Shown: in pieces, positions 5,119 through 54,099 of the stretch
How positions within the stretch are numbered: the stretch's first letter is position 1
Layout of the letters: each line of letters opens with the position of its first letter
NCBI RefSeq assembly: GCF_011386835.1
Contig: NC_088791.1
Location: forward strand, 255,378,001-255,442,000
From: Chrysemys picta bellii
Lineage: Eukaryota
Length of the DNA stretch: 64,000 nt
Direction of reading: 5' to 3'
Translations under genes and position numbers: made by a program
The notes under the pieces: model-generated
Seen by the model: only the letters and a program-made list of their open reading frames with translations
The model's database searches: none
What the model was told of the DNA's origin: nothing

Positions 5119-5555
5119 NNNNNNNNNNNNNNNNNNNNNNNNNNNNNNNNNNNNNNNNNNNNNNNNNNNNNNNNNNNNNNNNNNNNNNNNNNNNNNNNNN
5201 NNNNNNNNNNNNNNNNNNNNNNNNNNNNNNNNNNNNNNNNNNNNNNNNNNNNNNNNNNNNNNNNNNNNNNNNNNNNNNNNNNNNNNNNNNNNNNNNNNNN
5301 NNNNNNNNNNNNNNNNNNNNNNNNNNNNNNNNNNNNNNNNNNNNNNNNNNNNNNNNNNNNNNNNNNNNNNNNNNNNNNNNNNNNNNNNNNNNNNNNNNNN
5401 NNNNNNNNNNCACANNNNNNNNNNNNNNNNNNNNNNNNNNNNNNNNNNNNNNNNNNNNNNNNNNNNNNNNNNNNNNNNNNNNNNNNNNNNNNNNNNNNNN
5501 NNNNNNNNNNNNNNNNNNNNNNNNNNNNNNNNNNNNNNNNNNNNNNNNNNNNNNA
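5119..5555. other. Assembly gap (N run) with a 4-nt island 'caca' at 5411-5414
   Basis: Directly visible: N 5119-5410 and N 5415-5555. Confidence 0.99.
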
Positions 5556-25972: not shown

Positions 25973-26061
25973 GTTTCAGAGTAGCAGCCGTGTTAGTCTG
26001 TATCCGCAAAAAGAACAGGAGTACTTGTGGCACCTTAGAGACTAACAAATGTATTAGAGCA
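25973..26061 (+). mobile_element. Penelope pLTR fragment
   Basis: gtttcagagtagcagccgtgttagtctgtatccgcaaaaagaacaggagtacttgtggcaccttagagactaacaaat; nearly identical to the inverted copy at 53572-53637. Confidence 0.8.
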
Positions 26062-26152: not shown

Positions 26153-26251
26153 CTGTATAGTCCTCTGAGTGCCATCAATGGTGACAGACGATAAGGGTGA
26201 AGCCAGGTTCCACTCACTGGTCACATTTAGTTTCATCCCATCAACTTCCAC
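26153..26251 (-). CDS. PCCA: PCCA internal coding exon (human exon 20 equivalent), 99 bp, phase 0/0
   Basis: Minus strand tcacaacag|GTGGAAGTT...ACTATACAG|gtaaat = [33 protein letters not shown], versus recalled human [33 protein letters not shown]. Joins in frame to the 13128-13181 exon (QRTIQ-CLSRD). Confidence 0.97.
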
Positions 26252-27510
26252 CTGTTGTGACACCAAACAAGACTGTTACCATGAAGACGGACAGAACACT
26301 GATCTCAAGTTCATTGCTGCATACCAAGCAGAAACCATTTTAAAACAGATGGCTCCCAAACAACCTGTCATGTTTACTGCTTCTGCCATAAAAGACAGGG
26401 TCCAACAACAGAGTCTTCTAGGCATCTCTGGGGAGAGGTGAAGGACCTGTGAACAGCTGCCTCTGAGTAGTGAGGTTTCAAGTGATTTCCAGCAAGTAAC
26501 GAACACCCATCCAACTTTTAAATCTATCTGGACATGCTACATTTACTGCAATTAGACAAGTAATGCATATAAATTCCAGTGACACTTTGCAACCCACACC
26601 ACAGGGCTTGCATATAATATCCTCTCCAAGGACCAAGGAAGAACTTTCCCTGTGCTCTTAATGAAGGGTTTTGCATTGTTATCTTGATTAATATGAAGCA
26701 GTAATTAATTCTTTGGTGTTACATCTCAAAGTCCAGTCAAACTTTGCAAGTTCTGTCATGTTTTCCCTCAATCTACTACTAATCAGAGGACTGATTTCAC
26801 ACTTACATTCCACTGTGGTTATCCTGAAAGACTTAAGGGAAAAAAATCATCACCGCGTTTTTTTAATAAGAGAATTTTTCTACATAAGGACAAACAAGCT
26901 GAGTTATGAAACAAACAAAGTTAGTAACAGGAATAATGCTGACTGTGCTCTCTTACATTCACTCTAATTGGGCTATCAGCCCCTCTTAAAAAAAAATTAC
27001 CACAAACTGCTGAATGTTGTATTATGCTACAAGGACCTCAGAGTTTAACAACAGTAGAGTTTAATAAAAAGGAAGTAAAAATACCATTTATACAATAATA
27101 TTATATTGATTAACATTTGTAGAGTGCTTTGAACATGTAAAATGCTATTTATGCAAGGCAAAGGTAAGTACAAACGATCTCAACTATACATTATATTTTA
27201 AATAAAAGGAAAACAATAATTTTGTTATCTTGCATCCAGTCATACCCTCAAAAGCCCCAGAATATGTCCAATCAATAAATCACACACAATAACATCAAGT
27301 TTATCAAAATCCCTTATATTTCATGCCACTGAAATTATCTCAGTAAACTGGAAGAAAACACCGCTTCAGCAAAACTGTATTTACAATAAGTGCTGTGCCC
27401 TTCTTTGGTAACATAGTAAAGACATCTAAAAATTAGCCTTTTTAAATTTTAACATTTAATAATTTCATTTAATATATTTGACAATAGGGTAAGGCAGCAA
27501 AAATTATATT

Positions 27511-27607
27511 AAAAAGCAACAGAGGGTCCTGTGGCACCTTTAAGACTAACAGAAGTATTGGAACATAAGCTTTCGTGGGTGAATGCCCACTTCATCAGAC
27601 GCAAGTG
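27511..27607 (+). mobile_element. Penelope pLTR fragment carrying a hammerhead motif
   Basis: aaaaagcaacagagggtcctgtggcacctttaagactaacagaagtattggaacataagctttcgtgggtgaatgcccacttcatcagacgcaag; 8-bp direct repeat attatatt at 27503-27510 and 27608-27615. Confidence 0.8.
27563..27602 (-). ncRNA. Minimal type-I hammerhead ribozyme motif (PLE-associated)
   Basis: Minus strand 5'-GCGU CUGAUGA A GUGGG CAUUCA CCCAC GAAA GCU U AUGU-3': full CUGAnGA and GAAA core, 5-bp stem II, palindromic AGCU stem III, 4-bp stem I (two G.U pairs). Confidence 0.75.
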
Positions 27608-27852
27608 ATTATATTGTATCTAAAGGAGTTCCATATAACCAAACGTATATGGCTAATATGCATCATTTCATTTTACCTTGGAAAACCTTTAGCCCAAGAA
27701 ACCTCTAATTCCACAGATGCTTATTTTAGAATATAAACGTTTTCTTTAATGGATATGATCCACTCAATATTCCTACAGGTTTTGACTTCAAATACAGTCA
27801 TGTATAGAGATCATGAATAAAACAAGTAATTTATAATGGTTCACCAAAAGGC

Positions 27853-28204: not shown

Positions 28205-28546
28205 GTGCTAAAACAATCACCACCTTCAAATCCTTCCTCAAAAAATTCTCCTTTGATGTGATGCCTACAAAAAACTTGGCAACAGCTAAGCTGCTGGTGT
28301 GCTGAGACTACTCTCTATCATGCTGACCAGTACGGTCTCATTCTTTCCTTGTACTTCCCTGTCTGTCGGCAGCCATCTGTTGTCTCTTATCTTATATACA
28401 GATTGTAAGATCTCTGGGGGCAGGGACCATCTTTTGTTCTGTGTTTGTACAGTGCCTAACACGATGGAGTTCTGGTATATGACTAGGGCTCCTTGGCTTT
28501 ATGGTAAATAAATAATAATAATTTATGGTAAATAAATAATAATAAT
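28205..28546 (+). mobile_element. L2 LINE 3' end with duplicated 24-bp tail
   Basis: ccttcaaatccttcctcaaaa...acagattgtaagatctctgggggcagggacc...tgtttgtacagtgcctaacac; tail ttatggtaaataaataataataat x2 (28499-28546). Confidence 0.75.
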
Positions 28547-29503
28547 TAATAAACTTGCAATGTTTCTCAGGAACAAGAAAACAAAGGAGCAGCTGCCAGA
28601 GCAGATCAGAATACTGGCCAACAAGCAACTGAGACTGCACTCTGGGGCTGTACTTCTGCAAGATTTACATATAGTTTGGTAGAAGCTACAGCTGACATCT
28701 AAGTACTAATCAAAGGTGAAGGGTGCCATTCAAACACCTCAACTCTGCAACCAATTCCATTATTAGTCCCTCTATCACTGTAAAAAGATATTTTAAAAAA
28801 AGTGTCATACTGGCAAGTTACCAGACTCTGAGCCCTCACAAGAATACATACAAGTCTAGTCATCTGTGATTCAGATGAAGTTAGCATCCAGGAAATGGGG
28901 CAGAATGCACTGTGAGGGTGACCATGATGCAAGTTGGAGGCTCTGGAGGAGCAGGTTTGATTAGTGAAGCATGGTTCAAACACTGCAGCATTTATTGTGG
29001 ACTGTGTGGAAAATGCAGGCAATGCATTGCTTCTACCATATATTCACCATTCAGCAAGACATGTAGGACCAAATGAGGGAATTGAATATGCAGTTTGTAC
29101 CAAAGAGAGTCCAGAGAAAATTTTGCAAATGTGGCAGAGACAGCAAAAGCCCTAATGCTTAAAGTGGCAGGGCAGGGAGGGGAAAATATATCACACCATA
29201 GGAAAAATGAGGCAAGGTCTGAGGATAAGAGCAGAGTGGCCTTGCAGGAAGCAGGTTAATTGCGCTATGTAGCAAGAAGCTTCTATACAAGCCAAAAACA
29301 AAGAAAAAACAGTTATTTGTGGGATTAATTAGACTTTTACTTGTTTAAGTAATGAGACTGTCCCTTCCAGAAATGAGCCAAGTAAAGTAAGAGCAGAACC
29401 GCAAGTCCAAAAGCCAAGCTAGCTAATGGGATGGAAGCAGAAAGCCAAATATAATGGTCAGAGAACGGTCTGACTCAGTAGGAATGTCACAAACCTCTAT
29501 AAC

Positions 29504-42267: not shown

Positions 42268-43371
42268 CACCTCTACCCCGATATAACGCGACCCGATAAA
42301 ATGCTGGTTCGCATACAACACGGTAAAGCTCTGACACGCTGCTCTGAACAGCGTGTTAAGGGTGCCGGGCGGGCCGGGGCCAAGGGTTGGATAAGGGGCA
42401 GAGGGTCTCAGAGGCGGTCAGGGGCTCCCCCCCCCCCCCAGGGTCTAGGAGGCAGGAACTGTGGGGGGCACTTTGGGGGGCCCCGCAGTCCCAGAGTGGC
42501 CTGGGGGATTAGCGGGGGGCTGGGAGCAGCCCGCACCGCTTCCCTCGCCCGGGCCCCAGCCGTGTTGCTCAGGGGAGGGGGTTGGGGGAAGGGATCCCCC
42601 CTGCACTCACCAGCGGTGGAAGCGGAGCAGCCTGGCCCCAGCCCACTCCACTCCGCCAGCTCCCAGCCGCGACACTCCGCTTCCCACCGCAGGTGAGTGC
42701 GGGACCTTTCCCCAACCCTCCCCTTCCCCCAGCGACACGGCTGGGGCCAGGGCAAGGAAAGTGGAGCAGGCTGGGGCCACGTCGCTCCACTTCCCACCGC
42801 TGGTGAGTCTGGAGGGCATCCTTTCCCCCGCCTCCCTGCACTCACTGGCGGCGGGAAGCGGAGCACTGCGGCTGGGAGGTGGCGGAGTGGAGCAGGCTGG
42901 GGCCGCAACGCTCCGCTTCCCACTGCTGGTGAGTGCGGAGCGCGTCCTTTCCCCAATCTCCCCGGACTCACCGGTGGCGGGAAGTGGAGCAGCCCGGCCC
43001 CAGCCCGCTCCACTCCGCCAGCTCCCAGTGAATAAGGGGGGGGGCATCCTTTCTGCACTCTCCGGCGGCAGGAAGCGGAGCGCCGCGGCTGGGAGGTGGT
43101 CGAATGGAGCGGGCTGGGGCCGGGCTACGCTGCTTTCTGCAGCTGCTAGTGAGTGCCTGTCGGGGGTGTGGGTGGTGTGGATAGGGGTCGGAGCCGTCAG
43201 GGTACAGGGAGGTTGGGTAGGGGGTGATTAGGGACGGGGGTCTCTGGAGGGGGCGGTCAGGGAACAAGGAACGGGGGAGGGTCAAAGCAAGTTCGATATA
43301 ACGCAGTCTCACCTATAATGTGGTGAGATTTTTTTGTCTCCCGAGGACCGCGTTATATCGGGGTAGAGGTG
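42268..43371. mobile_element. Tc1/mariner (Tigger-like) non-autonomous element, 1104 bp, GC-rich repetitive interior
   Basis: Perfect 23-bp TIR cacctctaccccgatataacgcg; TA on both sides (42266-42267, 43372-43373). Confidence 0.9.
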
Positions 43372-52850: not shown

Positions 52851-53571
52851 AACAGTCCCAGTCATTGAAATCATACAGCTGAAGCCACTGTTACTATTTG
52901 TGTGGGTAAGGATTCACATGAGGGTTGCAATATCAGACAATTCAATAGTATATACACAAACATATTAAATGCATATACAGGAAGTTATGTCACGATTATG
53001 AATTGAATACTGTCTTCCTCAACCACAAATTACAGATAGAATCTAAAAGTATTTCCATTATCAAAATCATTTGTAAGGTCTCCCTCTGATAAGCCTTAAA
53101 CATTCCATCTGGGTTGGCACTTTCTTATATAAAACATTTCTCCAGAGAGGTGGAAATTAGTCAAGGGAAAGTGAGGAAAGAAAGTCCATTTGTTTATTGT
53201 ATTACTGAGAACTTGTCTATATGAACAATTCGTTTGCAGCAAGCTAGAGTGTGAATCTGCCCCACACTAGTCAACTGTGGACTAGATCAAAGTACATTAA
53301 TGAACTGTTAATGTGCGTGAGTAGGGTCCACATGGACAATTAGTCCACGGCAGACTAAAGCTGTTGTAAATCAGCATAGCTCCATTGAAGTCGATGGAGC
53401 GCTCTCAATTTATACAAGCTGAGGATATGTCCTAGGAAGTTTAGCATTCATTACATTTGCCAAAGTAAGTAGAAAGAACTACTGGAAAATGAATTGCAAT
53501 TATGAAAGTGGCAATAGGATGAGCGTGTCTTGTATACAGTTCTAGCATTTTTGGAATTGTCAGATCTGTTC

Positions 53572-53637
53572 ATGAAAGCTTATGCTCAAATAAATTTGTT
53601 AGTCTCTAAGGTGCCACAAGTTCTCCTGTTCTTTTTA
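53572..53637 (-). mobile_element. Penelope pLTR fragment (66 bp)
   Basis: tgaaagcttatgctcaaataaatttgttagtctctaaggtgccacaagttctcctgttcttttt; 11-bp direct repeat cagatctgttc at 53561-53571 and 53638-53648. Confidence 0.8.
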
Positions 53638-54099
53638 CAGATCTGTTCTATGTTATACTGTATTTGCCGTTCTGTAACTGGTTCTTTTACCTGAAGCTTC
53701 TTTCACAGGGTACGTACTATTCTGCTTTTTCATAATTTGCTTATATTTTTACAGAGTTCAACTCTAAAGAAGTCAGTTGGAGTGAAACTTTAATTCATCC
53801 ATGAATCACTCCCTTGCTCTCAGCAAATATCTGCACAAGCCACTGGCAAAGTGTCTCATTCTCCTCTAGAGCTGATCCACATAGAGTATAATTATCTACT
53901 ACTGCAATGAGTTATTCAATTAGCTCAAGTGGCAGAGGTCTGTGCGGGTGGATCTAAAGGTTCTAACCCTATTGATGATCCATATGGGTGTCAATATGAT
54001 GCCACATGATAGAGTTTCTGGGAGGGTTTCAGATTGCTTTATAAAATCTCGGCAAATATACACAAAAAACTAATAGAAACAATATTTTTAAGTTGAAAA

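What the first reader, a model, noticed from the sequence alone, without database searches (positions are those of the whole stretch)
27563..27602. Intact minimal hammerhead ribozyme core on the PCCA sense strand, 1.3 kb upstream of exon 20
Seen in sequence: the minus strand reads GCGU-CUGAUGA-A-GUGGG-CAUUCA-CCCAC-GAAA-GCU-U-AUGU, with all catalytic core bases, stem II, a palindromic AGCU stem III, stem I with two G.U pairs, and predicted cleavage after CUU (between 27567 and 27566). Established: Penelope-like elements carry minimal type-I hammerheads that cleave mainly as dimers, and intronic hammerheads are known in amniotes. Inference: because it is transcribed within PCCA intron 19, it could cut the nascent pre-mRNA, alone weakly or in trans with abundant PLE transcripts. 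That would affect splicing or output of a core metabolic gene.
Basis: partly seen in the sequence, partly recalled or inferred. Interest (0 to 1): 0.7.

Follow-up and report, generated by a model that had tools for sequence, protein, structure and literature searches.

The report
Dead Penelope retroelement hammerhead motif in intron
The hammerhead-ribozyme motif is really there, but it belongs to a 97-base dead fragment of a Penelope-like jumping gene in a PCCA intron, lacks what it needs to cut RNA alone, and is an ordinary, already described kind of sequence.

Summary
Window 27563-27602 (minus strand) carries every hammerhead core base, a 5-bp helix II, a 4-bp helix I with two G.U pairs, and the palindrome AGCU where helix III should be. 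The predicted cut lies between 27567 and 27566. A descriptor scan finds no other such site in the 64 kb, and random sequence gives about 0.03 per window.

It lies on the sense strand of PCCA, 1,312 nt upstream of an exon matching human PCCA residues 583-615.

The motif is the 5' part of a 97-bp insertion (27511-27607) flanked by an 8-bp target-site duplication. Its 3' tail recurs in two other short insertions in the window. It has the signature features of the minimal hammerheads of Penelope-like elements (PLEs), described in 2014 with turtles mentioned.

The functional inference is not supported:
- Helix III cannot form in a monomer.
- Helix I probability falls to about 0 with 200 nt of context on each side.
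- No partner copy exists in the window.
- The productive dimer is predicted to be unfavourable.
- Published monomers do not cleave.
- Introns cut by a hammerhead still splice.

No Rfam hammerhead model matches.

This scan has already noted the same kind of motif many times elsewhere in this genome. Verdict: real, ordinary, most likely inert.

The parts
27563..27602 (-). Minimal type-I hammerhead motif: 4-bp helix I, CUGAUGA box, unpaired A, 5-bp helix II with 6-nt loop, GAAA, palindrome AGCU instead of helix III, and U17. Predicted cut between 27567 and 27566.
   Evidence: Read directly. Only descriptor hit in the window, with 0.03 expected by chance. Box pattern unique.
27511..27607 (-). 97-bp insertion: the 3'-terminal fragment of a Penelope-like element. 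It has 5 nt, then the hammerhead motif, then a 52-nt tail ending in a T run. There is no tail extension.
   Evidence: Bounded by the 8-bp direct repeat. The tail is 84% identical over 45 nt to the insertion at 53574-53637 and 91% over 22 nt to the one at about 26008-26061. Insert GC is 0.45 against 0.33 for the surrounding intron.
27608..27615 (-). Upstream copy of the target-site duplication AATATAAT.
   Evidence: An exact match of 8 bp or more between 28-nt flanks occurs in 1.5% of random placements in this window. The AT-rich target fits the cleavage preference reported for the PLE endonuclease (PMC11167929).
27503..27510 (-). Downstream copy of the target-site duplication AATATAAT, directly abutting the T run that ends the insertion.
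26153..26251 (-). PCCA exon (33 codons, BT domain) with AG acceptor and GT donor. It sets the gene's strand and the 1,312-nt distance.
   Evidence: Pfam PCC_BT at E 4.8e-6. Human PCCA residues 583-615 at E 1.8e-11. Splice dinucleotides read.

Best explanation
The motif is a passenger. A Penelope-like retroelement (PLE) inserted by target-primed reverse transcription into AT-rich DNA of a PCCA intron. Only the last 97 nt of its RNA were copied: the hammerhead motif of the pseudo-LTR/ORF junction plus the about 50-nt stretch down to the internal start site of reverse transcription. An 8-bp target-site duplication was left behind.

In a tandem, full-length PLE transcript, two such motifs can pair through the AGCU palindrome to build helix III, and may cleave with help from the PLE protein. 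Here the motif is a single copy inside a long intron. It has no helix III, no partner, a marginal helix I, and lacks whatever lies 3' of the reverse-transcription start. It therefore does not cleave to any meaningful extent and is a neutral intronic fragment.

Shown: the anatomy, the strand, the insertion boundaries, the non-chance nature of the motif, and the predicted instability. Inferred: the insertion mechanism, the lack of activity in vivo, and neutrality. Whether the 5' end reflects random truncation or a fixed RNA 5' end at the hammerhead edge cannot be told from one copy.
For: - Motif and coordinates.
- Not chance.
- 97-bp insert with 8-bp duplication and higher GC than the intron.
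- Shared tail with two other short insertions, one of which has an 11-bp duplication (P about 4e-4).
- Turtles are named among genomes carrying such motifs.
- Architecture (hammerhead, then under 100 nt to the insertion's 3' end, AT-rich target) fits the anole PLE, where reverse transcription starts about 90 nt past the cut site.
- Helix III pair probability 0; helix I probability 0.04 with 100 nt of flank each side and 0 with 200 nt.
- Productive dimer +4.2 kcal/mol relative to free monomers.
- No partner copy in the window.
- Single min-HHR uncleaved in vitro; anole PLE hammerhead inactive without PLE protein.
Against:
- No orthologous or paralogous copies could be fetched (closed; searches gave nothing). 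The age of the insertion and the substitution rate of the core are therefore unknown.
- Both CpG sites of the motif are intact. That fits a young copy but would also fit constraint.
- No PLE reverse-transcriptase ORF lies in the window. The link to a PLE rests on motif signature, tail, duplication and literature, plus unchecked notes of this scan.
- Nearest-neighbour energies ignore hammerhead tertiary contacts and protein chaperones.
Confidence: 0.85

Rival explanations
1. Low-level collateral cleavage. Where PLEs are expressed, PLE protein or PLE transcripts carrying the same AGCU palindrome assist this copy. A small fraction of PCCA pre-mRNA is then cut at 27567/27566.
For: The core is intact. 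The palindrome allows pairing with any copy of the same kind (structure). The anole PLE hammerhead is protein-assisted. A preprint reports that retrozyme-type hammerhead repeats are under-represented in introns of Xenopus.
Against: The trans dimer needs three separate 4-bp helices and is predicted unfavourable, with a better non-productive dimer competing. In the anole element the RNA needed by the protein extends to +172 of the ORF, beyond the reverse-transcription start at +111 to +118. Inserted copies therefore end before that point (transfer to this family is inference). No RNA-seq ends were found at the cut site even for the active anole element. An intron cut by a hammerhead is still spliced. 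Intron depletion is common to transposons in general.
Confidence: 0.08
2. Exapted regulatory ribozyme: a domesticated intronic hammerhead, like those in RECK, CTCL or DTNB introns of amniotes, kept by selection to modulate PCCA mRNA biogenesis.
For: Sense orientation in an intron of a conserved gene. Intact core with two unmutated CpGs. Intronic hammerheads derived from retroelements are known in amniotes.
Against: No match to any Rfam hammerhead family, even at E up to 10 on a 76-nt stretch. No helix III and no loop 1 for tertiary contacts. A clean target-site duplication marks an ordinary insertion. The scan's notes list many like it in this genome (a lead only).
Confidence: 0.02
3. Chance occurrence of the hammerhead boxes in intronic sequence, unrelated to any mobile element.
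For: The catalytic boxes are short, and the folding energy of the 56-nt stretch is no better than its shuffles (z = -0.5).
Against: The full descriptor is expected 0.03 times per window, and 0 of 300 random windows gave full helix I. The motif sits in a duplication-flanked insert whose tail recurs twice in the window. It shows the PLE-specific extra features that were not part of the descriptor's core.
Confidence: 0.01

Closest known systems
Minimal hammerhead motifs (min-HHR) of Penelope-like elements, Cervera and de la Pena 2014 (PMC4209133)
   Same: [quoted passage not shown] Most copies are solitary motifs in truncated elements, and reptiles including turtle are named.
   Different: Nothing of substance. 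Helix II is 5 bp, against the 7-8 bp described for the Schistosoma families. This copy is 5'-truncated to 97 bp and lies in an intron on the sense strand.
Poseidon PLE of Anolis carolinensis (PAc), Frangieh et al. 2024 (PMC11167929)
   Same: The hammerhead lies shortly upstream of the internal reverse-transcription start that defines the 3' end of inserted copies. The target is AT-rich. An optional 30-40 bp tail extension exists: absent in this copy, and possibly present in the neighbouring copy at about 25972-26061.
   Different: A different family and host. The distance from cut site to insertion end is 56 nt here, against about 90 nt. Activity and protein dependence were not tested for this family.
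[quoted passage not shown]
   Same: Type-I topology, intronic location, sense strand, and likely retroelement ancestry.
   Different: Those have a stable helix III and loop 1-loop 2 tertiary contacts, cleave efficiently as monomers, and are conserved at orthologous sites. This motif has none of the structural features, and no Rfam hammerhead model matches it.
Animal non-LTR retrozymes (tandem type-I hammerhead repeats; PMC7229834 and bioRxiv 10.64898/2026.07.22.740005)
   Same: A PLE-related hammerhead carried by short non-coding units. Monomeric derivatives are scattered across chromosomes.
   Different: Retrozymes are defined by tandem repeats that give circular RNAs. Here there is a single unit with a target-site duplication and no tandem array.

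Membership tests
PLE minimal hammerhead (min-HHR) | Catalytic boxes CUGANGA and GAAA, with U16.1 and H17 in the right order for type-I topology | tested here: met
PLE minimal hammerhead (min-HHR) | [quoted passage not shown] | tested here: met
   A at 27591. The feature is listed in PMC4209133.
PLE minimal hammerhead (min-HHR) | G10.1-C11.1 closing pair of helix II | tested here: met
   G27590 pairs with C27575. Helix II pair probability is 0.84-0.99 with up to 100 nt of flank on each side.
PLE minimal hammerhead (min-HHR) | Helix III absent or 1-2 bp, with palindromic 15.2-16.2 allowing a dimeric helix III | tested here: met
   AGCU at 27571-27568. Intramolecular pair probability is 0. The dimer structure can be drawn without crossings.
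PLE minimal hammerhead (min-HHR) | Short helix I (4-5 bp) | tested here: met
   4 bp, two of them G.U.
PLE minimal hammerhead (min-HHR) | Family of copies in the genome showing covariation in helices I and II | not testable with these tools
   There is only one hammerhead-bearing copy in the window. Scan notes claim covariation elsewhere, but I did not check them.
PLE minimal hammerhead (min-HHR) | Physical link to a PLE (pseudo-LTR next to an RT/GIY-YIG ORF), or at least PLE-type insertion marks | tested here: inconclusive
   Insertion marks are met: 8-bp duplication, AT-rich target, and a tail shared with two other duplication-flanked or tail-extended fragments. However, no PLE ORF lies in the window.
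PLE minimal hammerhead (min-HHR) | Self-cleavage as a dimer | not testable with these tools
   Needs in vitro transcription. The energy model predicts the productive dimer to be unfavourable.
Canonical type-I hammerhead (Rfam Hammerhead_1, HH9, HH10) | Score at or above the covariance model's gathering threshold | tested here: not met
   No hammerhead family is listed at gathering on the whole window. None is listed at E up to 10 on 601 nt or on 76 nt.
Canonical type-I hammerhead (Rfam Hammerhead_1, HH9, HH10) | Stable helix III, and loop 1-loop 2 tertiary interaction | tested here: not met
   No helix III. Helix I is an open 4-bp stem that cannot be extended because the next pair would be U-U.
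Canonical type-I hammerhead (Rfam Hammerhead_1, HH9, HH10) | Conservation at the orthologous intron across species | not tested
Animal non-LTR retrozyme | Head-to-tail tandem repeats of the hammerhead-bearing unit | tested here: not met
   Single copy. Tandem Repeats Finder shows nothing at the site, and pattern searches find one copy.

The most novel reading that the evidence does not exclude
Sense-oriented solitary PLE hammerheads in host introns, this one included, are cut at a low rate when PLE protein or PLE RNA is abundant (for example in the germ line). Bursts of PLE expression would then nick many host pre-mRNAs. Selection would leave a genome-wide deficit of intact sense-intronic copies.
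Probability: 0.04. Interest if true: 0.55.

Novelty: already known. Interest (0 to 1): 0.12.

Why it matters
It matters little as it stands. It is one of very many solitary Penelope-derived hammerhead motifs, a class described in 2014 with turtles mentioned, and its anatomy argues against activity. It could serve as a convenient negative or test case, because it is a complete core on the sense strand of a well-expressed housekeeping gene. End-specific RNA sequencing at one defined phosphodiester (27567/27566) would show whether solitary min-HHRs ever cleave in vivo. That remains open for PLE hammerheads in general.

Tried and rejected
1. Rfam at gathering on the whole window, and at E up to 10 on 601 nt and on 76 nt. 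No hammerhead family matched; only weak chance hits to snoRNA and sRNA models appeared.

2. A metagenome-contig scan with the box pattern returned 120 loci. None has a helix II of 4 bp or more, and none has the PLE tail. All are chance matches in microbial contigs. Some came from gut metagenomes; they were only pattern-filtered in a script and not pursued.

3. A viral-contig scan with a tail pattern found 0 loci.

There is therefore no RNA or read evidence.

6. The supplement of PMC4209133 with the turtle motifs is not held.

7. An alternative register for helix III (A15.1 closing a 3-nt loop, with cleavage after A27566) was rejected, because helix I would then start with a U-U mismatch.

8. 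A search for a PLE ORF among the long ORFs of the window gave no Pfam hits.

9. Findings look-up by sequence was blank.

The N runs at 5119-5410 and 5415-5554 were left untouched.

Full report
**What is there.**
- Helix I 5' strand: 27602-27599.
- CUGAUGA box: 27598-27592.
- One unpaired A: 27591.
- Helix II: a 5-bp stem (27590-27586 with 27579-27575) closing a 6-nt loop.
- GAAA: 27574-27571.
- G, C, U16.1: 27570-27568.
- U17: 27567.
- Helix I 3' strand: 27566-27563.

Helix I has four pairs, two of them G.U. It cannot be extended, because the next pair would be U-U. The predicted scissile bond lies between 27567 and 27566.

**Is it more than chance?** A descriptor of my own required the core boxes, 0-1 bulged nucleotide, a helix II of 4 bp or more, a palindromic helix III substitute, U16.1 and H17. 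It finds this site and no other on either strand of the 64 kb. In 300 first-order Markov random windows it gave 0.03 hits per window, and none with a fully paired helix I. The pattern tool's own shuffles give 0.03 expected for the two boxes plus GCT. So the motif is not a chance match. It is, however, inherited from a repeat rather than evolved in place, as shown below.

**Gene context.** The stretch 26153-26251 (minus) is an exon with an AG acceptor and a GT donor. Its 33 codons hit the Pfam PCC_BT domain above the family cut-off (E 4.8e-6). They align end to end with human propionyl-CoA carboxylase alpha chain residues 583-615 of 728 (E 1.8e-11). The motif is therefore on the PCCA sense strand, 1,312 nt upstream of that exon, as claimed. 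The number 'exon 20' fits my memory of the human gene but was not tested.

**The motif is part of a short insertion.**
- The 8-mer AATATAAT occurs at 27608-27615 and again at 27503-27510, directly after the T run that ends the repeat. It brackets 97 bp (27511-27607).
- An exact flank match of 8 bp or more occurs in 1.5% of random placements in this window.
- The insert has GC 0.45 in an intron stretch of GC 0.33.
- Its 3' half recurs in two other short elements in the window.
- The first is 53574-53637 on the plus strand. It begins inside the hammerhead at the GAAA box and is flanked by an 11-bp duplication (P about 4e-4).
- The second is about 26008-26061 on the minus strand. It is 94% identical to the first over 54 nt and continues into a further stretch of about 35 bp.

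These marks fit what is published for Penelope-like elements (PLEs):
- Short 5'-truncated copies, target-site duplications and AT-rich targets.
- A hammerhead a few tens of nucleotides upstream of the element's 3' end, and an optional extension of 30-40 bp.
- Hammerheads in the pseudo-LTRs, with most genomic motifs solitary and probably from truncated elements (PMC4209133).
- Reverse transcription that starts internally, about 90 nt past the hammerhead cut site, at AT-rich cleaved DNA, with a 30-40 bp 'tail' (PMC11167929; PMC8557442).

**Membership.** The 2014 paper lists features that emerged beyond its search descriptor:
- the G10.1-C11.1 pair;
- palindromic 15.2-16.2;
- families with covariation.

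It also describes a short helix I. All features that a single copy can show are met here. The paper also states that similar motifs are conserved in reptiles, naming turtle and snakes.

Two tests could not be completed. Covariation within a family needs more copies, which I could not reach. A physical link to a PLE ORF fails because no long ORF in the window has a Pfam hit.

No Rfam hammerhead model matches. This holds at gathering thresholds on the whole window and at E up to 10 on 601 nt or 76 nt around the site. The motif is therefore not a member of the canonical type-I families, including the conserved intronic hammerheads of amniotes. It is not a tandem retrozyme either.

**Can it cut?**
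- *Helix III.* The AGCU palindrome cannot fold on itself, and the pair probability is 0. The monomer therefore lacks helix III, which the literature gives as the reason such motifs do not cleave as monomers.
- *Helix I.* Its pair probability is 0.7-0.9 for the isolated 40-mer. It falls to 0.36 with 30 nt of flank on each side, 0.04 with 100 nt and 0 with 200 nt. Helix II falls to about 0.2 with 200 nt or more.
- *Folding energy.* The 56-nt stretch folds no better than its shuffles (z = -0.5).
- *Partner in cis.* No second copy with both boxes exists in the 64 kb. The copy at 53574 is on the other strand and lacks the CUGAUGA box.
- *Partner in trans.* The double-hammerhead structure of two 40-mers scores -16.3 kcal/mol, against -20.5 for two free monomers. 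The best dimer, at -24.5, pairs the quasi-palindromic stretch that contains the CUGAUGA box, so it is non-productive. These energies ignore tertiary contacts and proteins, so they are only indicative.
- *Experiments in the literature.* A single Schistosoma min-HHR showed no detectable cleavage, and dimers and trimers cleaved poorly. The anole PLE hammerhead cleaved only when the PLE protein was added. No RNA-seq reads began or ended at its cut site.
- *RNA needed by the protein.* In the anole element this extends to +172 of the ORF, beyond the reverse-transcription start at +111 to +118. Inserted copies would then lack part of it. Applying this to the family here is inference.

**Would a cut matter?** Transcripts cleaved co-transcriptionally inside an intron by a hammerhead were spliced about as efficiently as intact ones. 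Only a much faster ribozyme abolished splicing (Dye et al. 2006 and Bentley and co-workers, as summarised in PMC2995048). A slow, rare cut 1.3 kb upstream of the acceptor would thus be unlikely to change PCCA output.

**What could not be done.**
- The metagenome scan returned only chance matches in microbial contigs. Some of these came from gut metagenomes and were not examined beyond a pattern filter.
- The viral scan returned nothing.

As a result there is no RNA-end evidence, no orthologue comparison and no family alignment. Inertness in vivo and neutrality are inferences from anatomy and literature.

**Earlier notes of this scan.** 187 notes in this genome mention hammerhead and Penelope together. 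Several follow-ups reached the same verdict on other pieces. One first-stage note makes the same kind of claim for a GRB2 intron. I treat these as leads about abundance only.

**Verdict.** This is a real, complete minimal hammerhead motif of the known Penelope-like-element kind. It lies in a 97-bp dead insertion in a PCCA intron and is most likely inert (confidence 0.85). Residual possibilities are rare assisted cleavage (0.08), exaptation (0.02) and chance (0.01).

Noticed in passing
window 53574-53637 (+), duplications at about 53561-53571 and 53639-53649: A second PLE 3' fragment of a related family. Its 5' end falls inside the hammerhead, at the GAAA box 7 nt before the predicted cut. It is flanked by the 11-bp duplication CAGATCTGTTC, with 2 extra nucleotides at the 5' junction. 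It is antisense to PCCA, so the pre-mRNA carries a stretch complementary (84% over 45 nt) to the 3' part of the motif at 27530-27574.
   Followed up: partly
window about 25972-26061 (-): A third PLE tail fragment, 94% identical to the 53574 copy. It lies about 90 nt downstream of the PCCA exon's donor site, on the sense strand. It continues past the T run into about 35 more bases, which may be the optional 30-40 bp PLE 'tail' extension. Its 5' end lies near the predicted hammerhead cut site but is ambiguous by several bases.
   Followed up: partly
window 27603-27607 (-): The 97-bp insertion starts only 5 nt upstream of helix I. A scan note (s1-322506) reports other insertions whose 5' end lies at the hammerhead edge. 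If this recurs, it would suggest a fixed RNA 5' end there (for example a transcription start in the pseudo-LTR) rather than random truncation. The two other copies in this window have different 5' ends.
   Followed up: no
window 27593-27601 (-): The stretch CGUCUGAUG, spanning helix I and the catalytic box, is quasi-self-complementary. It gives a predicted homodimer (-24.5 kcal/mol) more stable than the productive double hammerhead (-16.3).
   Followed up: partly
window 42300-43300, tandem repeat at 42760-42991: A GC-rich island (GC 0.51 in 42-44 kb) with long ORFs on both strands (up to 256 aa) and no Pfam hit. It also holds a 126-bp unit repeated 1.8 times at 83% identity.
   Followed up: partly
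window 28498-28547: A perfect 24-bp AT-rich tandem duplication (2.1 copies) in the same intron.
   Followed up: no
window 5119-5410 and 5415-5554: Two runs of N (432 bases in all).
   Followed up: no
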